A program made the translations under genes and the position numbers. Of a stretch of DNA of 64,000 nucleotides, positions 516-59,298 are shown piece by piece. Below the pieces are notes generated by a model, which did not search any database, was not told the DNA's origin, and saw nothing but the letters and a program-made list of their open reading frames with translations. Source of the stretch: Octopus bimaculoides (Eukaryota); NCBI RefSeq assembly GCF_001194135.2, contig NC_068981.1, forward strand, positions 149,615,108 to 149,679,107. The letters run 5' to 3'. Every line of letters starts with the position of its first letter. Within the stretch, counting starts at the first letter, position 1.

Positions 516-520
516 TCTTT

Positions 521-631
521 CACATCACGTTGAATGCACCGGTTATCATCCGAGCACCCGAAGTTAAGAACGTCGAGCCTAGTCAGTACTTAGATGGGTG
601 ACCGCTTGGAAAACCTAGGTGCTATAAGCGT
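521..631 (+). pseudogene. 5S rRNA pseudogene lacking the first ~9 nt
   Basis: CACATCACGTTGAATGCACCGGTTATCATCCGAGCACCCGAAGTTAAGAACGTCGAGCCTAGTCAGTACTTAGATGGGTGACCGCTTGGAAAACCTAGGTGCTATAAGC aligns colinearly with invertebrate 5S rRNA (box A AGTTAAG, box C GATGGGTGACCGC). It has many substitutions and no 5' end. Confidence 0.85.
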
Positions 632-13280: not shown

Positions 13281-13510
13281 GTGTATATGTATAAGTATAC
13301 ATATATATTTATTTATATATACGTATATATATATATGTAAGTTTATGAATTTGTGTTGCAATATTCCTGATGTGAAACTGTGTATTGAAACAGATATTAT
13401 TGCATTTCGGGATGGTAATTTGTTTTTCCAAATAAACACATGCACTATATATTCCCATTATTTACATTATCTACATTTGACGGATATTCGTCCTCATCTT
13501 GTTTGTTGTT

Positions 13511-13556
13511 AACACAACGTTTCGGCTGATATACCCTCCAGCCTTCGTCAGGTGTC
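13511..13556 (-). ncRNA. Small type I hammerhead ribozyme motif (sense copy within the SINE)
   Basis: GACAC-CTGACGA-A-GGCTG(GAGGGTATAT)CAGCC-GAAAC-GTT^GTGTT. Stem I GACAC/GTGTT, 5-bp stem II, palindromic ACGT stem III. Confidence 0.78.
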
Positions 13557-13600
13557 TTGGGGAAATTTCGAACCTGGGTTCTCATTCCTATCGATGTTAC

Positions 13601-13632
<32 letters not shown>

Positions 13633-13650
13633 TATTATTATTATTATTAA

Positions 13651-13726
13651 TCAGGTCGCTGCCGTGAATCGAACTCGGAACCTTGGGGTTAGTAGCCCGC
13701 ACTCTTAACCACTACGCCATATGCCC
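13651..13726 (-). promoter_or_regulatory. tRNA-derived (tRNA-Arg-like) head with Pol III A and B boxes; not a functional tRNA
   Basis: GGGCATATGGCGTAGTGGTTAAGAGTGCGGGCTACTAACCCCAAGGTTCCGAGTTCGATTCACGGCAGCGACC: A box TGGCGTAGTGG, B box GAGTTCGATTC. No complementary acceptor stem. Confidence 0.8.
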
Positions 13727-13728
13727 AA

Positions 13729-13774
13729 GACACCTGACGAAGGCTGGAGGGTATATCAGCCGAAACGTTGTGTT
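13729..13774 (+). ncRNA. Small type I hammerhead ribozyme motif (inverted copy)
   Basis: Identical to 13511-13556 but on the + strand. Predicted cleavage between 13769 and 13770. Confidence 0.78.
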
Positions 13775-14039
13775 AACAACAAACAAGATGAGGACGAATA
13801 TCCGTCAAATGTAGATAATGTAAATAATGTAAATAATTCCTCATCTCTTAAATATAGAACTGCACTATATATTCGTTCTTCACTCGGTTATTATTGTTCT
13901 AATTCCACCTCATATCCATTGTCCAGAAGTCTTTCGTCGCTCATCTGTGATCTCTTCCGCAACACTTTCCGTCTTCGTGTGTGCTCTTGCTCCGCTAATT
14001 CCATCCTGTTCTTCTATCATGTGTATCCTTATATGCGCA

Positions 14040-37762: not shown

Positions 37763-39371
37763 CTGTATGAACTTATTTGGTATTGCATCGAATGTTGAGC
37801 GATTGCTTAGAAAAACTATGACGAATTGGAGGACGGACCTGACAGCATGCGGAAGAAGTTTAGGGATAGTAGAAATTAGAGGCATCTTCCATGGGGACTG
37901 CTTCTCCCCACTGATCTTTGTACTGTACTTGATACCACTAACACTAATTCCGAGGAAAGTAAAAGCTGGGTATGTATTTGGAAGCCGCGAGCAAAAAGTC
38001 AACCATTTGTTATTCATGGATGACCTCAAACTTTATGGTAAAGATGAAGCCCAAGTCAGTTCCCTCGTTGATACGATGTATAGCTTCAGTGCTGATATCA
38101 GAATGGAGTTCGGACTGAGAAAGTGTGGTGTGTTTGTCTTGGAGAGAAGCAAAATCAAATGTATTGACGGGCTAACGATACCATCGGGGGAGGTTATGAA
38201 GCAGATAGAAGAGACGGGCTATAAGTACTTGGAGATTTTGGAAATGGACAAATTGATGGAGAAAAAAAATGACAAAAAAATTTAAGGTGGAATACTTGCG
38301 CAAACTGAGACAGATACTTAAGTCGAAATTAAATGGACGGAATAAAATCGAAGCTACGAACAACTGGATGGTTTCACTCTTTAGATATGGAGCAGGGGTA
38401 ATCGCATGGACAGTAGACGAACTAAACAGCTAAGACAGAAAGACAAGGCAGTCGCTAACTAGATATGGATCACTCCACCCAAAACGTGACACAGACAGAC
38501 TGTATGTACCAAGAAAAAGAGGTGGAAGAAGCCTTATTGGATGCGAATACAGCATTAGAGCAGAAGAAAACAACATAGCCTCGTATGTAAAAAATGCCAC
38601 AGAACCGCTATTATTAGAAGAAGGCCTGGCTTGTGTAGGAGGAAAGATTGCAAAGGTGGGTAAAGAAAAGAATGCATGGCCAATTTCATAGGGATGTTGA
38701 AGATAAGACAGACAGAGAAAAAAGATGGCTGTGGATGACTAAAAGTGATTTAAAACCGGAAACGGAAGCTCTAATCTGTGCCGCCCAAGAGCAAGCACTA
38801 AGAACAAACTACATAAAATATAGAATAGGCAACACATCAGAAAGTGATAAGTGCAGAATTTGTGGAAAAAACGGTGAAACCGTATGACATATTACCATCC
38901 AATGTACGTCACTAGCCCAGTAGGAATATGAGAGACGCCACGACAATATAGCTAGGCTTGTCCATTGGACACTTTGAAACACGTGTGGTCTTGACAGAGC
39001 AAAAAATTAGTATGACCACAAACCTGAAGTCATCGTCGAAAATAGAAATGCAAGGATCCTATGTGATTTTATGAGTCAGTGCGACTACGAGATAGAGAAT
39101 AAGAAAAGTCGAGAGATATGACAGGTTAGCTTGGGAAGTTAAGCAGTTGTGGTCGATGAAAAAAGTAGCAGTAGTACCAATAATTGTCGGAGCCCTGGGA
39201 ACAGTGAGCAAAAATCTCGAGAAGTACGTAGAACAAATAGGGATTGCAATACAGGTGGAGCACTTACAAAAAACAGTACTGCTTGGAACCGCTCGAATAC
39301 TCCGGAAGGTGCTCGAAAAATAAGATGGTGTTACCTTAGTTCACTGGTAATACATGTACAGCAAAGGAACT
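37763..39371 (+). mobile_element. 5'-truncated R4/Dong-clade non-LTR retrotransposon (RT, CCHC finger, restriction-like endonuclease region), family B, decayed
   Basis: RGIFHGDCFSPLIFVL...NHLLFMDDLKLY...GLRKC...YKYLEI; KRMHGQF...ETEALICAAQEQALRTNY...CRICGKNGETV*HITIQC; LQKTVLLGTARILRKVL. Bounded by (TAA)n on both sides. Confidence 0.9.
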
Positions 39372-40103: not shown

Positions 40104-40107
40104 ATTT

Positions 40108-40200
40108 GCGAGGTGGTAGGGTCGGACTGGAGTCGCTGGAAGGCTCGAAAAATGATGCCTTGGAGGGGCAGTTTGCAGGGGTGGGAGATGATAGGAATCG
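40108..40200 (-). mobile_element. Short Penelope-like fragment
   Basis: About 85% identical to the reverse complement of 42450-42540 (GCGAGGTGGTAGGGTCGGACTGGAGTCGCTGGAAGGCTC). Confidence 0.8.
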
Positions 40201-40508
40201 AGCCGGGCCAATCTTTGGCCGAAACATATCTAGGTTATCTAAGGTTATCTAAATTATATACTGCTTTTTCCAGCTGCGATTCATAAATAACTGTATGTAT
40301 CTGTGAATTATCCAACCATTCACACATGCAAATTCAATGACATTAGCAGATGATTTATTTGAACAACTTCACACTCATGGTAGGACTGGCATCTATTTTT
40401 TCATGTAAATGTAACTCCAAACTTGTTATTACAAGGTTTCTAATCTGACACTCTTACTACTTCACACATCTAATACGTACAGCCTACGCAATTTACTTTT
40501 ATCTCTAG

Positions 40509-40541
40509 ACAAATATGTCACTTGTATCAACGAAGAACTTC
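40509..40541 (+). CDS. Candidate coding micro-exon (D-KYVTCINEEL)
   Basis: Strong acceptor atttacttttatctctag, donor ttc|gtaaga, 33 nt, phase 1-1, continues 34045-34081 in frame. Confidence 0.38.
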
Positions 40542-41024
40542 GTAAGAAGATTATGTCTTTATAGCCTACACATTAATTAAAATCCTATCTTTTTATGAAT
40601 CTAGACGGCTGCCCACGTAAAAATACAGGTATTTCATTTATTTCCTAATCGACATATCTTCAAACAACACTCTTCACACAGTATTCGAAATAGTTGTATT
40701 GTTACTCTCCTAAAACAATTAAATATATGCATTTTGCACAAAGCATTTTGCATTTCTTAAACATTTTATAGCACTTATATGATACGCATTTTTTGCTTAT
40801 ATATGTGAAATATTGCATTTTAAAACCCCCTCAAAAAAATAATGGAAATGCTCTATAAAAATGCTCTTCTCTATTGTTTGGAGTTAGAGGTGTAGAATTC
40901 GGAACTGGGTTTTAAACGAACTGCAAATTCAGAAACAAAATCTAAGCACTACAGTGCTTAGATTTGAAGTGCTTATATATGAAGTGACTTCTGAAATGTT
41001 TCTCCCAAATTCTTTGTTATATAC

Positions 41025-41093
<69 letters not shown>

Positions 41094-41580
41094 CATACAT
41101 ATATATATATATATNNNNNNNNNNNNNNNNNNNNNNNNNNNNNNNNNNNNNNNNNNNNNNNNNNNNNNNNNNNNNNNNNNNNNNNNNNNNNNNNNNNNNN
41201 NNNNNNNNNNNNNNNNNNNNNNNNNNNNNNNNNNNNNNNNNNNNNNNNNNNNNNNNNNNNNNNNNNNNNNNNNNNNNNNNNNNNNNNNNNNNNNNNNNNN
41301 NNNNNNNNNNNNNNNNNNNNNNNNNNNNNNNNNNNNNNNNNNNNNNNNNNNNNNNNNNNNNNNNNNNNNNNNNNNNNNNNNNNNNNNNNNNNNNNNNNNN
41401 NNNNNNNNNNNNNNNNNNNNNNNNNNNNNNNNNNNNNNNNNNNNNNNNNNNNNNNNNNNNNNNNNNNNNNNNNNNNNNNNNNNNNNNNNNNNNNNNNNNN
41501 NNNNNNNNNNNNNNNNNNNNNNNNNNNNNNNNNNNNNNNNNNNNNNNNNNNNNNNNNNNNNNNNNNNNNNNNNNNNNNNN

Positions 41581-41635
<55 letters not shown>

Positions 41636-41636
41636 C

Positions 41637-43470
41637 ATGCCCCACGAAATTGAATACCTCGACCGTGTCCTTGCCACCTTAGTGGTTTCCCTCCCCTCCC
41701 ATGTCTATAGTACTAACCATGCTCTCTATCTCTTTAACTCTTTCTCTTTCCTTTCTGGCCCCGAAGCATTTTCTGGACCTTCGATTCTACCCTCAACCTG
41801 ACACCTCCACACTTCTTCCTCTGGACGAACTTGTTCTCTCCCTCAACTGCTCCTTGTTCGCGGAGGATTTTTACCAACAGTCCGGGAGTGGCCATGAGAA
41901 CGAGAATGGGTTCCAACTATGCGAACCTGTTCATTAGCTACGTTGAGACACAATATTGCCAATATTTACTGGTCCTACTCCCGAACTATAATGTCGTTAT
42001 ATCGATGACTGTATCGGTGTGACATCACTCTCCAGCGAACACTAAGATTCCTTCCTCGCTTTTGTCCAATCCTTCCATCTTGCCCTCGAATTCTCCTGCA
42101 GTACTTCTAACTCTTTCGTCGCATTTCTCGATATTTCTGTCAGCATAGACCACTCTGCTCTCACTACCTCCATCCACTACAAACACACCAGCTCACACTC
42201 ATATCTTAAATTTTCCTACTCCAACTCTACCCAAACTAAGCTCTCCATCACCTACTCACAATTCTTCCGTCTGCGCAGGCTCTGCAGTGACAACTAATTT
42301 TGAGGACTCAGTCTCAACTCATGGCTCGCTACTTCATCCTTCGTGGATATGTCCACACCACCATTCACACTGCCCTTTCCAGGACACGTTCCGTAGACAG
42401 TACCTTTGCTCTTTCTCCTCGCATCCACCTCACCGTTGTCCGTTTCCCGTTTCCCATCACCTCCCACCCCTGCACCCTGCCCCTCCAAGGCACCATTTTC
42501 TGAGCCTTCCAGCGACTCCAGTCCGACCCTACCACCTCGCACATCTTCTCTAGCCTACCCCTTACCTCCTTCAAACTAGCCCACTACCTGCGTGACCTCC
42601 TAGTCCACAGTTTCTTCCCTAACCATACTCTCCCCCACGCTGCTGCACGTGTCCTTACCTCTCCAACACGACCGTCTTCACAGGTACCCATTATCGTCCC
42701 TATCATATCACCGACTCCTTTACCTGCACTTCTAGTAATTTCATTTATTGCATCACCTGCTCTTTCTGCCCTTATTTGTACTTCGGTCAAACGGGACGCT
42801 GCCTGGCTGACCGTTTCACGGAGCACCTCCGAGACATCAGACTCGGCAATTACACCCGGTCTCCCGCCATTTCCGCTCTAGCGGTTATTCGCAACAACAC
42901 CTGCCTGTGTTTAGATTGTCTTTGCACAGGGGGCCATCCGGACTCAGGCCTTCGCTGTCAATAGGAATTAATCTTCTCTCTTCGGTCCTTTGTGCCACAA
43001 GTGCTCAACTCCCCTCCTTTCTTTATCTGACACCTACGTCTTCTCTTCACTCCTATCCACTTCCTCTTTTCGGTAATACCCCACCCCACCGCACCTCACC
43101 CCACACATTTACACTCGGCAAAGTAACTAGCCCCTATGCACACACCCACACGTACACATTCACACACTCCCCATTCTCGCTTACACACACGCACGCGTAC
43201 CTTCATTTCAGATCACCAGCACTTTATTATCTCCCTTTCTTCCAAACGTTTCTTTCAAACTTTTTTTCTAATTATTCACCACGCTTGACCGCTAAATCTA
43301 CAAGTTTTTTCCATTCTCTCTCTGCTTATTTTCTCTCATTCCTTTCTGTTGAAGAGCGTAGGCTGGAAAGGTAAAAACCTTTTTCATTTTCTCGAGCGCC
43401 AAACTAATACACCTGCTTGTTGTTCATACACCTGTGTACGTCTTTTGTTTTGCTATAAATTTCAACTCTC
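41637..43470 (+). mobile_element. Decayed, 5'-truncated Penelope-like element (RT, GIY-YIG, 3' tail)
   Basis: GVAMRTRMGSNYANLFISYVET, RYIDDCIGV, FIYCITCSFCPYLYFGQTGRCLADRFTEHLRDIRLG; C/T-rich 3' UTR and tail with a degenerate hammerhead. Confidence 0.9.
43342..43377 (+). ncRNA. Degenerate hammerhead motif in a PLE tail
   Basis: CTTT-CTGTTGA-A-GAGC(GTAG)GCTG-GAAAG-GTA^AAAA: same layout as the other small HHRs, with U at core position 6 and two stem-breaking changes. Confidence 0.4.
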
Positions 43471-43540: not shown

Positions 43541-44316
43541 GACATAAGAGAATTGGAAAATGGAGACAATCGAACAAGATGTTATTTAAATTATTTATAT
43601 CACCATATCACCGACAAACGTTTCGATTGATTCATTAAAATTAATCTGAAAGGAAGAATGATGTGGAATAATGTATCAATTCTATCAGGGAGGAGATTAT
43701 AAACAACAGTACCCATCAATTAGCCATTTTTCAAGATGTAAGAAACTATGATATATAGTTTATGAAAAACAAAGGTGAATAGTGAACGATAGTAATCTTA
43801 AAATACTGTTAAGAAATTTGACGTCATATGACGAATGAAGAAGAGAAGGAGGCGAGAAAGAGAATGGAAGGAGTAATGAAGGTATAAACAAATAGAAAGT
43901 GAATGACACGTGGATTGAAATGTAACAGGAAAGAATAGGCTGTATGGGATAAAAAGAATAATATGAAATTTGTAGATATTATTAGGTAAGGAGGCAGATA
44001 TTTGAAATAACCGAAAGTGTGTTTTTTCCAATGTAAACACCTGTAAACATGCTCTTTATCGGTGTTGATTAGTGTGCGTTTGGAGAAAAGGATAAATAGT
44101 TGTTCGTCCATACAAAGAGGGTAAAACATTTTTTCATGATCATTTCCTTATGATAAAAAAATATTTTTGCCCTCTGATTGATACATTATTCCACATTATT
44201 CTTCCTCTCGGACTAATTTCAATGTATCAATCGAAACATATGTCGGCAATATGTCGATATAAAGGATTTAAAGAACATCTTGTGCGTTTGTCTTCATTTT
44301 CTATTATGTTTATGTC
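43541..44316 (-). mobile_element. Old PLE-like 3' remnant with a 5'-inverted hammerhead-bearing tail (arms ~43541-43693 and ~44167-44316)
   Basis: The arms are about 75-80% reverse-complementary. Each has a long stem II (GATTGATACATT/AATGTATCAATC), GAAAC, and GTC. The right copy has palindromic stem III ACATATGT and stem I TTGCC/GGCAA. PLE assignment of the spacer is weak. Confidence 0.62.
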
Positions 44317-54663: not shown

Positions 54664-54706
<43 letters not shown>

Positions 54707-55149
54707 NNNNNNNNNNNNNNNNNNNNNNNNNNNNNNNNNNNNNNNNNNNNNNNNNNNNNNNNNNNNNNNNNNNNNNNNNNNNNNNNNNNNNNNNNNNNNN
54801 NNNNNNNNNNNNNNNNNNNNNNNNNNNNNNNNNNNNNNNNNNNNNNNNNNNNNNNNNNNNNNNNNNNNNNNNNNNNNNNNNNNNNNNNNNATATAATATA
54901 TGATTAATAAATTCAAAAAGGGATAAAACTCATTTACAAGAATTTTATCAAGAAGCCAGTGTGTAAAAAAATTCATAAGGGAAATTTCTATTCCCAAGAA
55001 TATAATTATTCGTTTATATTTATATAATGGGCATTACTACAGAAAAATAATAATGCCACACACTGGACTTCTCAAAATAACCACATTTAGTACCGAATGC
55101 GAGGAAAAACAACCAACAGAAGACGACCAACTTTCTTTTAAATAACTCA

Positions 55150-55211
55150 ACTATGTATCGACTGATTTCGCGATTACTAGAATGAATCTAGATTTCGCTC
55201 ATCAGCATAGT
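55150..55211 (-). ncRNA. Canonical type I hammerhead ribozyme motif
   Basis: ACTATG-CTGATGA-GCGA(AAT CTAGA TTCAT TCTAG TAA)TCGC-GAAA-TC(AGTC)GA-TA^CATAGT. All three stems pair. Confidence 0.82.
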
Positions 55212-55640
55212 ATTGTTCCAAAAATATATATAAATAAAAAGAATTCTCACCTCACCAAACACGAACACACTACGTATCCGACAGAGTAAAGGAAATGATG
55301 TTTATCAGTATACATCTTCATCAAAGAAGCGGGAATACTTCCGGGTTGCTTTTGGGTACACGTGTGGCGACAGGAATAAAAATTCAGCATTGAATATATT
55401 CCGTGTATATATTTGATTAATAAATTCAAAAAGGGATAAAACTGTTTTACAAGAATTTTATCAAGAAGCCGGTGTGTAAAAAATATCATAAGGGACATTT
55501 CTATTCCCCGGAAGTATTCCCGCTTCTTTGATGAAGATGTATACAGATAAACTTCATTCCCTTTACTCTGTCGGATACGTAGTGTGTTCGTTTTTGGTGA
55601 GGTGAGAATTCTGTTTATTTATATATATTTTTGGAACAAT

Positions 55641-55702
55641 ACTATGCTGATGAGCGAAATCTAGATTCATTCTAGTAATCGCGAAATCGGTCGATACATG
55701 GT
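55641..55702 (+). ncRNA. Canonical type I hammerhead ribozyme motif (inverted copy)
   Basis: ACTATG-CTGATGA-GCGA...TCGC-GAAA-TC(GGTC)GA-TA^CATGGT. The two differences from the other copy lie in loop III and as a G.U pair in stem I. Predicted cleavage at 55696/55697. Confidence 0.82.
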
Positions 55703-55901
55703 TGAGTTATTTAAAAGAAAGTTGGTCGTCTTCTGTTGGTTGTTTTTCCTCGCATTCGGTACTAAATGTGGTTATTTTGAGAAGTTCAGTGTGTGACATT
55801 ATTATTTTTCTGTAGTAATGCCCATTATATAAATATAAACGAATATATATATAATATATATATAATAAATATATATAAATACACATTATGTACAGGACAT
55901 T

Positions 55902-56298
55902 ATCAACGAGTGAAAAATACGTAAACACACGAGAGAAAAGTACAAGATAAAATACCAAAAGAAGATAATTCGCTCATCAGTTGTCGGCTGTTTATTACTA
56001 ACCAATTCGTGCTTTTAACGACAAGATAAGAATATTTCATAACACAGTACCATCCAAACATTCTTAAAGTATCAAATTCGTGGTACGCCAACTTTATTGT
56101 TCGAAGCCCTAACTCTCCAAAAATTTAATACTTTTAAAGTTACTGGATGCTGCTGTCTAATGAAGTATTCCTATCTTGTCGCTAAAAGCACGAAATGGGT
56201 AGTAATAAACCGTCGACAACTGATGAGCGAATTATCTTCTTTTGGAATTTTGTCCTGTACTTTTCTCTCGTGTGTCTACGCATTTTTCACTCGTTGAT
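55902..56298. repeat. ~177-bp inverted repeat (55902-56078, 56122-56298) with a 43-nt spacer
   Basis: ATCAACGAGTGAAAAAT.CGTA.ACACACGAGAGAAAAGTACA mirrored by TGTACTTTTCTCTCGTGTGTCTACGCATTTTTCACTCGTTGAT; about 80-85% identity. Confidence 0.88.
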
Positions 56299-57176
56299 GT
56301 CCAGTACTTAATGCGTATTTTTTTTATTTATTGATAATTGAACGCCACACAGCCTTGTAGAAGAAAGTTCTTATATATATATATATATNNNNNNNNNNNN
56401 NNNNNNNNNNNNNNNNNNNNNNNNNNNNNNNNNNNNNNNNNNNNNNNNNNNNNNNNNNNNNNNNNNNNNNNNNNNNNNNNNNNNNNNNNNNNNNNNNNNN
56501 NNNNNNNNNNNNNNNNNNNNNNNNNNNNNNNNNNNNNNNNNNNNNNNNNNNNNNNNNNNNNNNNNNNNNNNNNNNNNNNNNNNNNNNNNNNNNNNNNNNN
56601 NNNNNNNNNNNNNNNNNNNNNNNNNNNNNNNNNNNNNNNNNNNNNNNNNNNNNNNNNNNNNNNNNNNNNNNNNNNNNNNNNNNNNNNNNNNNNNNNNNNN
56701 NNNNNNNNNNNNNNNNNNNNNNNNNNNNNNNNNNNNNNNNNNNNNNNNNNNNNNNNNNNNNNNNNNNNNNNNNNNNNNNNNNNNNNNNNNNNNNNNNNNN
56801 NNNNNNNNNNNNNNNNNNNNNNNNNNNNNNNNNNNNNNNNNNNNNNNNNNNNNNNNNNNNNNNNNNNNNNNNNNNNNNNNNNNNNNNNNNNNNNNNNNNN
56901 NNNNNNNNNNNNNNNNNNNNNNNNNNNNNNNNNNNNNNNNNNNNNNNNNNNNNNNNNNNNNNNNNNNNNNNNNNNNNNNNNNNNNNNNNNNNNNNNNNNN
57001 NNNNNNNNNNNNNNNNNNNNNNNNNNNNNNNNNNNNNNNNNNNNNNNNNNNNNNNNNNNNNNNNNNNNNNNNNNNNNNNNNNNNNNNNNNNNNNNNNNNN
57101 NNNNNNNNNNNNNNNNNNNNNNNNNNNNNNNNNNNNNNNNNNNNNNNNNNNTATATATATATATATATATATATAT

Positions 57177-58296
57177 TGTCTTGGCATCGCTTCGTTGACG
57201 AAGATTAGAAAGGCTGTTGTCCACGTCGTCAGCACGCTCGTTTGTGGCTGAAAAGGCCGATATGGGATCGACATATCCGATTGCAGTGATGACAGAAGTA
57301 CGGTTGTTCAGGGTCTAATGATGCAGCTGAATTATGTTTTCGCCTCTGATATTTGTCTTCAAGAACGGCTCTGCGTTTTATCTCAAAGGAGGAAACAACA
57401 TCGCTCATGGTATGGCACCAAGCAACGCAATCAGCTACTATAGTGGACAACTCACGATAATCAATGTCATAAACGCTAAGGAACTGCTTCAGGCAGTCCT
57501 TGTAACGCTTCCTTGGCGCTCTCCTCTTGCGGTGGTCTGTGGTGAGCTCACCGTACATGATCTTGGGTAGGCGGTGGTCTTTGATCATGTTAACGTGCCA
57601 TGCCCAATGCAGTTGTGTCTCAAGTAAAATGGCTTCCAGGCTAGTGACATTTGTTCGCTCGAGGAGGACCTTAGTGTTGGTAATGTAATCGTTCCAGTAA
57701 ATGTTGAGGATAGTACGGAGGCACAGTTGGTGAAAACTTCAAGGAGCCGCAGATGATAATAGTAGGGGATCCAGAACTCAGAGCCGTATAGAAGCGTCAT
57801 GAGAACGACGGCCTTGTAGACGCTGACTTTTGTGCTGATCTTAAGATGCTTGTTGCTCCACACACGCTTGTACATTCTGCCAAATGCTTTGTTTGCCTTT
57901 GCGAGTCCGTTGTCAATTTCTTTGTTGATACTTGCATCTGATGAGATAGTACATCCAAGATAACCGAACTGCTGTACCGACCTCAGTTCTGTTTCGGCTA
58001 TGGAGATGTGGGGCGGGCTGTAATGGTGTAGGAATTTAGTCTTTTTCAAGCTTACTTCTAGCCCGAAGAGTTGGGTAGCCTCTGCAAAGCAGGATGTGAC
58101 GCACTGCAGGGCTCTTTCGGTGTGTGCAACAAGTACGGCATCATCTGTAAAGAATCAGTTGCTCTTGGATCTTGATGTGAGCCTGTAGGTTGATGTGAGG
58201 CTGGAGGTTGAAAAGACTGCCGTTCAGACGGTACGTGATGTAATCGCCGTCTTCAGCGCCGAGGTCTGCAGTCGCCTGCTTCAGCATCATGCTGAA
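57177..58296 (-). mobile_element. RTE/BovB-clade LINE, 3' portion (RT C-terminal half, C-terminal zinc finger, 3' UTR), decayed
   Basis: FFSMMLKQ..YITYRLNGSLFNL, FGYLGCTISSDASINKEIDNGLAKANKAFGRM...TKVSVYKAVVLMTLLYGSE, RLPKIMYGEL...YKDCLK...CHHCNRICRSHIGLFSHKRAC. Confidence 0.92.
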
Positions 58297-58467
58297 GAAA
58301 GACAATGTGGTTTCAGAGCCAATAGAGGCACAACAGATATGGTTTTTGTTCTCAAGCAGGTCCAAGAGAATTGCCGGGTGCAAAGGAAACCACTTTATGT
58401 AGCATTAGTCATTCTGATGAAAGCTTTCGACACTGTGAGCAGGAAAAGTCTGTGGCAGATCCTAACC
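58297..58467 (+). mobile_element. Inverted 5' segment of the same RTE element (upstream RT motifs)
   Basis: RQCGFRANRGTTDMVFVLKQVQENCRVQRKPLYVALVILMKAFDTVSRKSLWQIL on the opposite strand, abutting the minus-strand body. Confidence 0.85.
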
Positions 58468-59298
58468 AATATATTATATATGTATGTGTGTGTGTGTGTG
58501 TGTGTATGTGTGTGTGTGTGTATGCATGTATGTATGTATGTATGTATTTGCACGCATATATACCTATATGTATGTATATATGTATAGGCCAACTTTTATC
58601 ACACAGTTCTCACCTGAATTTATGGAATATATGAAAACTGGTAATTGACGATATAACTGTTTATTCTCTTAATTTAGCAATACAATGTCATATTATGGAT
58701 TAGTTGGTGTTGGTTTTTGAAAAAAAATTATTTAATCTAATATATTCCGAATACATATTTAGCTACAGAGTGTAGGGACTACATTACATGAAATATATTT
58801 TCCCTGTGGTTCCTTTTAAGGAAGTGCTTTATTACCTGCGAGAATTCGATTTTGAGGTTATAGAGATATTAATTACGTTACTTCCTATAAACTTATAATT
58901 TTGCTATAATAGAAGATGACAGCAACCACTTAGGATCATTTAACACAATTAGTGTTTATTTCTATGTTTAAGGGAATATACATATTCTATGAAGAAAATT
59001 GATAATTTTTGTTCTTAAACTGGGTGTATGTCAACGCATAGTTATACTTACATTTGAATGTTAAACGCTGACCATTTTGATATATAGGTGTTCTATTCTT
59101 ATGTTATATATGTTGTATTCAGACTCAGTATAAATCTACGGTGCTTTAAAATTGCTCTAAAACAGATATAGAATTCTTAATATGAAATAAACTCAAACAT
59201 TTTGAGAAACTAGCATTTGCTACTCTAAAATATATAAGAAAGGTCAAAAACCTACTAAAGAGATTATATTTATATATATTCTTTGTAAGTATATACAT

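What the first reader, a model, noticed from the sequence alone, without database searches (positions are those of the whole stretch)
54901..55844. ORF-less retrozyme-like element with a canonical hammerhead in both arms of a 338-bp inverted repeat
Seen: on the minus strand the order is repeat A, ~68-nt spacer, B (HHR in sense), repeat A, preceded by an inverted B joined through a 2-3 nt C overlap. The hammerhead has an intact CUGAUGA/GAAA core, 6-bp stem I, GCGA/UCGC stem II extended by CUAGA/UCUAG, 3-bp stem III and an AUA cleavage triplet. The two changes between copies within the motif preserve the fold. Established: retrozymes are non-autonomous retroelements with terminal direct repeats and hammerheads that yield circular RNAs. 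Inference: a cephalopod retrozyme-like family, probably PLE-dependent. A read-through transcript would form a ~340-bp duplex.
Basis: partly seen in the sequence, partly recalled or inferred. Interest (0 to 1): 0.85.

Follow-up and report, generated by a model that had tools for sequence, protein, structure and literature searches.

The report
Hammerhead retroelement with Penelope-style inverted twin
A short non-coding retroelement carrying a self-cleaving hammerhead ribozyme motif lies in a TA microsatellite as a partial tandem next to an inverted truncated twin, the usual footprint of Penelope-like retrotransposition, so it is a real feature of an already known kind.

Summary
Arms 55000-55345 and 55507-55852 form a 346-nt inverted repeat, 97% complementary. 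A 105-nt direct repeat (54896-55000 and 55409-55513) recurs at a 513-nt spacing. Each arm carries one complete type I hammerhead, on opposite strands, with predicted cleavage at 55696|55697 (+) and 55156|55155 (-). My descriptor expects 0.005 such motifs per window by chance. Rfam reports no hammerhead here.

Read on the minus strand, the locus is an inverted 5'-truncated copy, then one ~513-nt unit without a credible coding ORF (A-spacer-B), then the start of a second unit. TA-rich DNA flanks it. This matches the published architecture of Penelope-like element (PLE) insertions. A second, unrelated inverted hammerhead pair at 13450-13835 shows the same geometry, with a 14-bp target-site duplication and a one-sided 31-nt tail.

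I read the locus as a solo copy of a non-LTR-retrozyme-type element integrated by PLE machinery. "Retrozyme-like, PLE-dependent" is therefore partly supported. Tandem arrays, copy number, circular RNA and the cephalopod host remain untested. Each strand has only one sense ribozyme, and the isolated motif prefers an inactive fold, so this locus probably cannot release circles. It is a new member of a known kind, of modest interest.

The parts
54668..54706 (.). (TA)n microsatellite left of the assembly gap (54707-54890). Presumed target sequence.
   Evidence: TRF: period 2, 19.5 copies, 100%. Gap listed.
54896..55000 (-). A copy 1: the start of a second tandem unit, or a long 3' extension, following B on the minus strand. 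It runs into TA-rich sequence and then the gap.
   Evidence: Direct repeat of 55409-55513, 91-93% identical, spacing 513.
55000..55345 (-). B, left arm: the 3' part of the full unit, sense on the minus strand.
   Evidence: 346-nt inverted repeat, 97% complementary.
55150..55211 (-). Type I hammerhead motif, sense on the minus strand. H17 is A55156 and predicted cleavage is at 55156|55155. Stem I is fully Watson-Crick and loop 3 is AGUC.
   Evidence: Descriptor hit, fold, alignment.
55346..55408 (-). Spacer S (63 nt) between A and B of the full unit.
   Evidence: No repeat partner in the window.
55409..55513 (-). A copy 2: the 5' end of the full ~513-nt unit A-S-B. Read in sense it starts GGGAATAG.
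   Evidence: Both junctions onto A begin at the same nucleotide (read).
55507..55508 (.). Head-to-head junction between the inverted copy and the full unit, a 2-nt CC/GG microhomology.
   Evidence: Read directly: four C at 55506-55509, where A ends in CCC and B begins with CCC.
55507..55852 (+). B, right arm: an inverted, 5'-truncated copy that lacks A and S. Its 3' end points outward into TA-rich DNA.
55641..55702 (+). Type I hammerhead motif, sense on the plus strand. H17 is A55696 and predicted cleavage is at 55696|55697. Stem I has one G.U and loop 3 is GGUC.
   Evidence: Descriptor hit, chance expectation 0.005 per window, fold.
55843..55881 (.). TA-rich microsatellite right of the element. 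Presumed target sequence.
   Evidence: TRF: period 2, 20.5 copies, 79%.

Best explanation
The locus is one insertion of a short (~513 nt), AT-rich (33% GC) retroelement with no credible ORF. Its 3' part carries a canonical-architecture type I hammerhead ribozyme. That makes it a solo or 1.2-unit copy of a non-LTR-retrozyme-type, non-autonomous element.

It was integrated into a (TA)n microsatellite by the reverse transcriptase and GIY-YIG endonuclease of a Penelope-like element acting in trans.

Shown here: on the minus strand the order is an inverted 5'-truncated copy (B only), then a full unit A-S-B, then the start of another unit (A). The 3' ends point outward and the 5' ends meet at a 2-nt microhomology.

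Inferred: the PLE enzyme cut both target strands and primed cDNA synthesis from both, which produced the head-to-head twins. A longer-than-unit template (tandem transcript or circular RNA) produced the B-to-A tandem junction.

In the family's master copies the hammerhead would process tandem transcripts into unit-length RNAs that a host ligase could circularise. It probably works best as a double hammerhead, because helix III is only 3 bp.

At this locus each strand has only one sense ribozyme. Read-through would bury it in a ~346-bp hairpin. The copy is therefore most likely a dead-end product, not a source of circles.
For: 1. The motif is real. All core nucleotides are present, with G10.1-C11.1 and A15.1-U16.1. 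It occurs exactly twice in the window and nowhere else, against 0.005 expected by chance.

2. Helix I has 6 bp and helix II has 4 bp before an internal loop. Helix III is short with a nearly self-complementary loop. These are the features given for canonical metazoan type I hammerheads (PMC4209133).

3. The geometry matches PLE insertions: 'organized into partial tandems... [quoted passage not shown] The (TA)n flanks here are shown.

4. A purified PLE protein cleaves and extends both target strands, unlike R2 or L1 (PMC11167929).

5. Pairs of hammerheads 100-700 bp apart on opposite strands were already noted for PLE relics in Schistosoma.

6. The same window holds an independent second case at 13450-13835. 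It has PLE-type minimal hammerheads in both arms, 3' ends outward, a 14-bp target-site duplication and a 31-nt extension on one side only. PLE-type integration therefore operated in this genome.

7. Both junctions onto A start at the same nucleotide, GGGAATAG. That marks a true 5' end of a ~513-nt unit, not two random truncations of a long element.

8. The unit has no ORF above 88 codons, and the three frames searched found no credible relatives.

9. Animal retrozymes are reported as relatives of PLE pLTRs, and solo 'monomer' copies are common (bioRxiv 10.64898/2026.07.22.740005).
Against: - Only one locus is available. There is no other copy in the remaining 59 kb.
- No relatives turned up in any searchable collection, although none of these is known to contain the host genome.
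- No tandem array of two or more ribozyme-bearing units is visible. The 184-N gap hides what follows A1.
- The unit is longer (513 nt) than the 150-450 nt quoted for animal retrozymes.
- Rfam hammerhead models do not score the motif.
- The minimum-free-energy fold of the isolated motif is an inactive rod: -19.0 kcal/mol against -13.3 for the active fold.
- A copies differ more (7-9%) than B arms (3.2%). This is not significant (Fisher p=0.15), but it is unexplained if everything arose in one event.
- No target-site duplication can be read in TA-rich flanks.
- No PLE coding sequence was seen among the 10 long N-free ORFs scanned. Only LINE-like RVT_1 fragments matched.
Confidence: 0.68

Rival explanations
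1. The pieces are ordinary 5'-truncated remnants (pLTR fragments) of an autonomous Penelope-like element, not a dedicated non-autonomous retrozyme-type family.
For: PLE insertions are heavily 5'-truncated and carry hammerheads in their terminal repeats. Most PLE hammerheads genome-wide are solitary relics. No family data are available to show a short master element.
Against: The full copy runs A-S-B with no ORF. The tandem junction (B followed by A) and the inverted junction both start A at the same nucleotide. That is improbable for two independent truncations of a 3-4 kb element. The hammerhead is of the canonical 6 bp / 4 bp type. Metazoan autonomous PLEs are reported to carry minimal variants, like the one at 13.5-13.8 kb.
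Confidence: 0.17
2. The inverted duplication is an assembly artefact: a short-read mis-join in a small contig between two gaps in TA-rich, repeat-rich DNA.
For: The contig is only 1498 bp, bounded by N runs and (TA)n. The literature warns that PLE structures disturb WGS assemblies.
Against: The arms differ at 11 positions, so they are not one copy used twice. The junction shares only 2 nt, and a 7-mer nearby, which is far below any assembler k-mer. The same head-to-head geometry, complete with a target-site duplication, occurs inside a 12-kb gap-free contig at 13450-13835.
Confidence: 0.07
3. The structure arose at the DNA level, as a foldback or MITE-like transposon or as a replication template-switch inverted duplication in a fragile (TA)n tract. 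The hammerhead would be a passenger.
For: A second palindrome (55864-56332) lies immediately next door in the same TA tract. Other inverted repeats exist in the window.
Against: The arms are not terminal repeats around unique cargo. One arm is embedded in a direct A...A partial tandem, which a MITE or a simple fork-switch does not predict. The geometry (3' ends out, 5'-truncated twin) is specific to PLE-type retrotransposition and recurs at 13.5 kb with a target-site duplication and tail.
Confidence: 0.06
4. The hammerhead is a chance look-alike with no catalytic ability.
For: There is no Rfam hit. The cleavage triplet is AUA where GUC is usual. Helix II is unusually long at 29 nt. The minimum-free-energy fold is not the active fold.
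Against: The chance expectation is 0.005 per window. Every invariant core position is present, along with G10.1-C11.1. Both substitutions between the copies spare pairing. The motif sits in exactly the genomic context where hammerheads are known.
Confidence: 0.02

Closest known systems
Animal non-LTR retrozymes (Cervera & de la Pena 2020, PMC7229834; e.g. Mytilus galloprovincialis, Acropora millepora, axolotl)
   Same: Non-coding and low in GC (33%), with a type I hammerhead of canonical helix I/II dimensions and a short helix III. There is a head-to-tail junction between units. Co-occurrence with PLE-type elements is expected. Solo 'monomer' copies are described (10.64898/2026.07.22.740005).
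   Different: Only ~1.2 units are visible, where retrozymes form arrays of two to hundreds of units. The unit is 513 nt, against the usual 150-450. Helix II is extended by an internal loop and a second 5-bp stem. An adjacent inverted truncated copy is not mentioned where I searched those retrozyme papers. Circular RNA and copy number are unknown.
Penelope-like element insertions with pseudo-LTRs (Evgen'ev & Arkhipova 2005; Craig et al. 2021, PMC8557442; Frangieh et al. 2024, PMC11167929)
   Same: Partial tandem plus an inverted 5'-truncated copy with 3' ends outward. The hammerhead lies in the repeated part. The target is a (TA)n microsatellite. The structure troubles assemblies. Priming from both strands offers a mechanism.
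   Different: There is no RT/GIY-YIG ORF anywhere in the element. The hammerhead is of the canonical type, not the minimal type. The 30-40-bp tail and the target-site duplication cannot be read here.
PLE minimal hammerheads (Cervera & de la Pena 2014, PMC4209133), including pairs 100-700 bp apart on opposite strands in Schistosoma
   Same: Two hammerheads about 540 bp apart on opposite strands. Helix III is short, with a nearly palindromic loop suited to a double-hammerhead.
   Different: The min-HHRs have helix II of 6-8 bp, a bulged base after A9, helix I of 4-5 bp and almost no helix III. That description fits the other pair in this window (13516-13551 / 13734-13769), not the motif of the finding.
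Newt satellite 2 and Schistosoma Sm-alpha hammerheads (Rfam RF00163 Hammerhead_1)
   Same: Type I topology, an intact core, and a weak helix III that implies dimer-dependent cleavage.
   Different: No score against the Rfam models. The sequence, cleavage triplet (AUA) and helix II length all differ.

Membership tests
Hammerhead ribozyme, type I | Conserved core C3 U4 G5 A6 N7 G8 A9 / G12 A13 A14, the A15.1-U16.1 pair, and H17 at the cleavage site | tested here: met
   CUGAUGA at 55647-55653, GAA at 55683-55685, A55686-U55695 and A55696. The mirror copy has the same features.
Hammerhead ribozyme, type I | Three helices around the core, with helix I open and helices II and III closed by loops | tested here: met
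   Helix I has 6 bp, helix II has 4+5 bp with an internal loop, and helix III has 3 bp plus a tetraloop. Chance expectation is 0.005 per window.
Hammerhead ribozyme, type I | Match to the curated covariance model (Rfam Hammerhead_1 and clan) | tested here: not met
   No hammerhead family was reported at gathering score or at E<=10, even on 111 nt. My inference is that the 29-nt helix II and the AUC/GAU-A helix III region cost too many bits. PLE min-HHRs are also missed.
Hammerhead ribozyme, type I | Site-specific self-cleavage | not testable with these tools
   Thermodynamics suggest weak monomer activity. The active fold scores -13.3 kcal/mol against -19.0 for the minimum-free-energy rod. The helix III self-duplex scores -10.4 kcal/mol for the right copy and -6.9 for the left.
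Animal non-LTR retrozyme | Tandem repeats of two or more units, each with a hammerhead in the same orientation | tested here: inconclusive
   One full unit plus 105 nt of the next, then a 184-N gap. Only one sense hammerhead per strand is visible.
Animal non-LTR retrozyme | Non-coding unit of a few hundred bp with low GC | tested here: met
   The unit is 514 nt with 33% GC and a longest open frame of 88 codons. The three frames searched found no credible relatives. The length is somewhat above the quoted 150-450 bp.
Animal non-LTR retrozyme | Multicopy family in the genome | not testable with these tools
   No copy in the other 59 kb of the window. The host genome is not in any searchable collection.
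Animal non-LTR retrozyme | Expression as unit-length linear and circular RNA | not testable with these tools
   No transcript data available.
Penelope-like element (autonomous) | ORF encoding a reverse transcriptase plus a GIY-YIG endonuclease | tested here: not met
   No long ORF in 54891-56388. The RVT_1 fragments elsewhere in the window look LINE-like. Only 10 long ORFs were scanned, so PLE fragments elsewhere in the window are not excluded.
PLE-type insertion architecture | Partial tandem (pseudo-LTR) plus an adjacent inverted 5'-truncated copy, with 3' ends outward | tested here: met
   compared with the description in PMC8557442.
PLE-type insertion architecture | A 30-40-bp tail at one end and a target-site duplication | tested here: inconclusive
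   The flanks are (TA)n and a gap. On the left copy, B is followed by 11 nt plus A (at least 116 nt), which is longer than a typical tail. Both features are clear at the second locus, 13441-13874.
PLE-type insertion architecture | Insertion into microsatellite, (TA)n | tested here: met
   (TA)n at 54668-54706, 55843-55881, 56372-56388 and 57152-57176. The bias is described.

The most novel reading that the evidence does not exclude
The unit belongs to an active family in this invertebrate genome (possibly a cephalopod) that produces circular RNA. Under this reading the locus is direct structural evidence that retrozymes with canonical hammerheads are integrated by PLE enzymes through priming on both target strands. 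A by-product would be that such head-to-head insertions make ~350-bp perfect hairpin transcripts. These could feed small-RNA or A-to-I editing pathways and silence the family.
Probability: 0.15. Interest if true: 0.55.

Novelty: new member of a known kind. Interest (0 to 1): 0.3.

Why it matters
Which enzyme mobilises animal retrozymes is still argued from co-occurrence and from sequence similarity to PLE terminal repeats. A retrozyme-type unit with no credible ORF that carries the PLE integration footprint (an inverted truncated twin, a partial tandem and a TA-microsatellite target) is a small piece of structural evidence for that link. It also defines a family that can be counted and tested in the host genome.

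There are two practical points. Hammerheads like this one, and the minimal one at 13.5 kb, are invisible to Rfam-based annotation. Head-to-head hammerhead pairs should be read as PLE-type insertion scars, not as designed double-ribozyme devices.

Tried and rejected
- **Rfam.** A gathering-threshold scan of the window and E<=10 scans of 1.5 kb and of 111 nt gave no hammerhead. The only hits were plant miRNA-precursor models far below their gathering scores (MIR5048 at 63 bits against 160). These are artefacts of the long hairpin.
- **Other copies in the window.** blastn with word size 9 and nhmmer found none.
- **Copies elsewhere through open frames on the element.** Two word-index protein searches (83 aa and 72 aa) found nothing. 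A full HMMER search of 1.8 billion representatives with a 55-aa frame gave only two weak multi-stretch hits covering 16-20 residues, which I take to be spurious.
- **Exact-pattern scans** of JGI metagenome contigs and GTDB genomes for the ribozyme found nothing.
- **Literature string search** for the ribozyme sequence found no paper. The retrozyme paper's supplement does not mention cephalopods.
- **Host identification.** The best RT relatives are 54-69% identical, come from unnamed ENA assemblies, and give no organism. Exact look-up of a window ORF is not on record. 'Cephalopod' stays unverified. Cephalopod genomes are reported to hold abundant Penelope elements and 235 Hammerhead_1 hits in the giant squid.
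- **The neighbouring palindrome** 55864-56332 shares the 12-mer CTGATGAGCGAA but has no significant similarity to the unit and no GAAA/helix partner. I rejected it as a second hammerhead.
- **Pol III A and B boxes** and tRNA-like heads are absent from the unit.
- **Other inverted repeats in the window** (43541/44177, 15/165, 40104/42448) contain no hammerhead-like cores.

Full report
**1. What is in the sequence**

The finding lies in a 1498-bp contig (54891-56388) bounded by N runs (54707-54890 and 56389-57151) and by TA microsatellite.

Two arms form an inverted repeat: 55000-55345 and 55507-55852. It is 346 nt long, 97% complementary, with 161 nt between the arms. The arm alignment shows 11 substitutions and no indels.

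A 105-nt segment A occurs twice in direct orientation, at 54896-55000 and 55409-55513. The copies are 91-93% identical and 513 nt apart. A 63-nt spacer S (55346-55408) has no partner.

Read on the minus strand, the order is:
- antisense B
- A-S-B
- A
- gap

**2. The hammerhead**

On the plus strand at 55641-55702 the sequence reads:

ACUAUG / CUGAUGA / GCGA-AAU-CUAGA-UUCAU-UCUAG-UAA-UCGC / GAA / AUC-GGUC-GAU / A / CAUGGU

- All invariant core positions are present, along with G10.1-C11.1 and A15.1-U16.1.
- Helix I is open, so the topology is type I.
- Predicted cleavage follows A55696.
- The mirror copy on the minus strand (55211-55150) would cleave after A55156.

I wrote a descriptor requiring the core, helix II of at least 4 bp, helix III of at least 3 bp and helix I of at least 5 bp. 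It finds exactly these two sites in the 64 kb, and still only these two when relaxed to 3/3/2. In 400 first-order Markov simulations of the window, the expected number per window is 0.005 at the strict setting and 0.07 at the loosest.

The two substitutions inside the motif fall in loop 3 (55689 G/A) and in helix I (55700 G/A, turning G.U into A-U).

Helix I has 6 bp followed by a 3x3 internal loop. Helix II has 4 bp followed by a 3x3 internal loop. These are the distances at which canonical metazoan type I hammerheads make their loop-loop contacts (PMC4209133). Whether this motif makes such contacts is my inference.

Two cautions apply.
- Rfam 15 reports no hammerhead at gathering score or at E<=10, even on 111 nt. 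I attribute this to the 29-nt helix II and the unusual AUC...GAU-A helix III. I could not test that explanation.
- The lowest-energy fold of the isolated motif is not the active one. CUGAU of the core pairs with AUC(G/A)G, giving -19.0 kcal/mol against -13.3 for the hammerhead fold.

The helix III hairpin alone has no predicted stability. Two copies can form an intermolecular helix III of 10 bp, at -10.4 kcal/mol for the right-arm variant and -6.9 for the left. This is the behaviour described for newt, axolotl and PLE hammerheads that cleave as dimers. The G-to-A change in the left copy also strengthens the inactive pairing.

**3. What the arrangement means**

Published descriptions of Penelope-like element insertions match this anatomy point by point. 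Copies are heavily 5'-truncated and organised in partial tandems that create pseudo-LTRs. [quoted passage not shown] The hammerhead sits in the repeated part. Naiad-clade PLEs insert preferentially into (TA)n, and the structures upset short-read assemblies (PMC8557442).

A purified PLE protein cleaves and extends both strands of its target, unlike R2 or L1 (PMC11167929). That gives a mechanism for two cDNAs in head-to-head orientation.

Here the 3' ends of both copies point outward into TA-rich DNA. The 5' ends meet at a 2-nt microhomology (55507-55508). The inverted copy lacks A and S.

Pairs of PLE hammerheads 100-700 bp apart on opposite strands were already noted in Schistosoma.

**4. An internal control**

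A relaxed 'minimal hammerhead' descriptor (chance expectation 0.015 per window) picked up a second, unrelated pair at 13734-13769 (+) and 13551-13516 (-). Its features are:
- helix I of 5 bp
- core CUGACGA
- a bulged A
- helix II of 6 bp
- GAAA
- a palindromic CG

This is the consensus published for metazoan PLE min-HHRs.

The two motifs sit in the arms of a 117-nt inverted repeat, 13450-13566 / 13719-13835. The arms are identical over about 105 nt and again have their 3' ends outward.

That insertion is flanked by a 14-bp direct repeat, TGCACTATATATTC (13441-13454 and 13861-13874). It carries a 31-nt extension on the right side only, which matches the PLE 'tail'.

It lies in a gap-free 12-kb contig. 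This shows that PLE-type integration operated in this genome, and that head-to-head hammerhead pairs here are biological and not assembly errors.

**5. Retrozyme-type element or truncated PLE?**

The full copy A-S-B has no ORF above 88 codons. The three open frames I searched found no credible relatives.

A begins at the same nucleotide (GGGAATAG in sense) in both junctions: the tandem junction (B...AACGAATA-ATTATATTCTT-A) and the inverted junction. Two independent truncations of a multi-kb element at one nucleotide are unlikely. I therefore take A's start as the true 5' end of a ~513-nt unit.

The hammerhead is of the canonical kind associated with animal non-LTR retrozymes, not the minimal kind of autonomous metazoan PLEs. 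GC content is 33%.

A 2026 preprint argues that animal retrozymes derive from PLE terminal repeats, and it describes frequent solo monomers.

I therefore favour a solo (1.2-unit) copy of a retrozyme-type non-autonomous element mobilised by a PLE, with confidence about 0.68. The truncated-PLE reading stands at about 0.17.

**6. What this locus can and cannot do**

Both copies span the ribozyme cleavage site intact. The template was therefore uncleaved, multimeric or religated RNA. This is in line with the observation that unprocessed RNA is the main PLE substrate in vitro.

As assembled, each strand has one sense hammerhead, so no unit-length RNA can be excised. A read-through transcript folds into an almost perfect ~346-bp hairpin (-598 kcal/mol, z = -64), which would sequester the ribozyme.

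Feeding of small-RNA or editing pathways is possible but is pure inference.

**7. What could not be done**

- No other copy exists in the window.
- Nothing was found in metagenome or prokaryotic genome collections, in protein space, or in the literature. None of these sources is known to contain the host.
- The host could not be named. The literature does show that cephalopods have abundant Penelope elements, and that the giant squid genome has 235 Rfam Hammerhead_1 hits. Hammerhead-bearing repeats would therefore not be a surprise there.

**8. Verdict**

The 'retrozyme' life cycle (arrays, circles) and the host are untested. The inverted repeat is an integration scar, not a device.
- It is a new member of a known kind, with interest about 0.3.

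Noticed in passing
window 13441-13874: A second, unrelated head-to-head inverted repeat (arms 13450-13566 / 13719-13835) has a PLE-type minimal hammerhead in each arm (13734-13769 on +, 13551-13516 on -). It is flanked by a 14-bp direct repeat, TGCACTATATATTC, and has a 31-nt extension on the right side only. It looks like a complete, young PLE-type insertion, and Rfam does not detect it.
   Followed up: yes
window 13600-13725: A tRNA-like sequence lies between the arms of that second repeat. On the minus strand it reads GGGCATATGGCGTAGTGGTTAAGAG...GGTTCCGAGTTCGATTC and is followed by a (TAA)n run, resembling a tRNA-derived SINE. ARAGORN and Rfam do not call it. It may be a later insertion or a template-switch product.
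   Followed up: partly
window 55864-56332: A ~470-bp near-palindrome (arms 81-86% complementary, 33-nt centre) lies directly beside the finding in the same TA tract. Both arms contain CTGATGAGCGAA, identical to the start of the hammerhead core plus helix II. Nothing else is similar to the unit, and no GAAA or helix partner exists. It could be a MITE-like element. The shared 12-mer (roughly a 1% chance by a back-of-envelope estimate) is unexplained.
   Followed up: partly
window 55647-55690 and 55162-55205: The minimum-free-energy fold of the isolated hammerhead pairs core CUGAU with AUC(G/A)G of helix III, giving an inactive rod. The left-arm variant (A, where the right arm has G55689) makes this pairing fully Watson-Crick and weakens the dimeric helix III.
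   Followed up: yes
window 517-629: A 5S rRNA match (56 bits, above gathering) has a damaged acceptor helix, with several non-canonical pairs and deletions. It is likely a 5S pseudogene or a 5S-derived SINE.
   Followed up: no
window 37767-38285 (+), 57585-58049 (-), 58195-58587 (+): Fragments that look like LINE reverse transcriptase. Two of them (37767-38285 and 58195-58587) match Pfam RVT_1; 57585-58049 had no Pfam hit and is judged RT-like by eye. For the 37767-38285 fragment, the only one searched, the best database relatives are only 54-69% identical. No GIY-YIG or other PLE coding sequence was seen among the 10 long ORFs scanned.
   Followed up: partly
window 43541-44316, 15-298, 40104-42544: Three further inverted repeats (140 nt at 83%, 134 nt at 73%, 97 nt at 91%) contain no hammerhead-like cores. 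Their nature was not determined.
   Followed up: partly
window 54891-56389: At relaxed thresholds, Rfam plant miRNA-precursor models (MIR5048, MIR821 and others) 'hit' the long hairpins, with E-values down to 4e-13 but far below their gathering scores. This illustrates how inverted repeats mimic miRNA precursors.
   Followed up: yes
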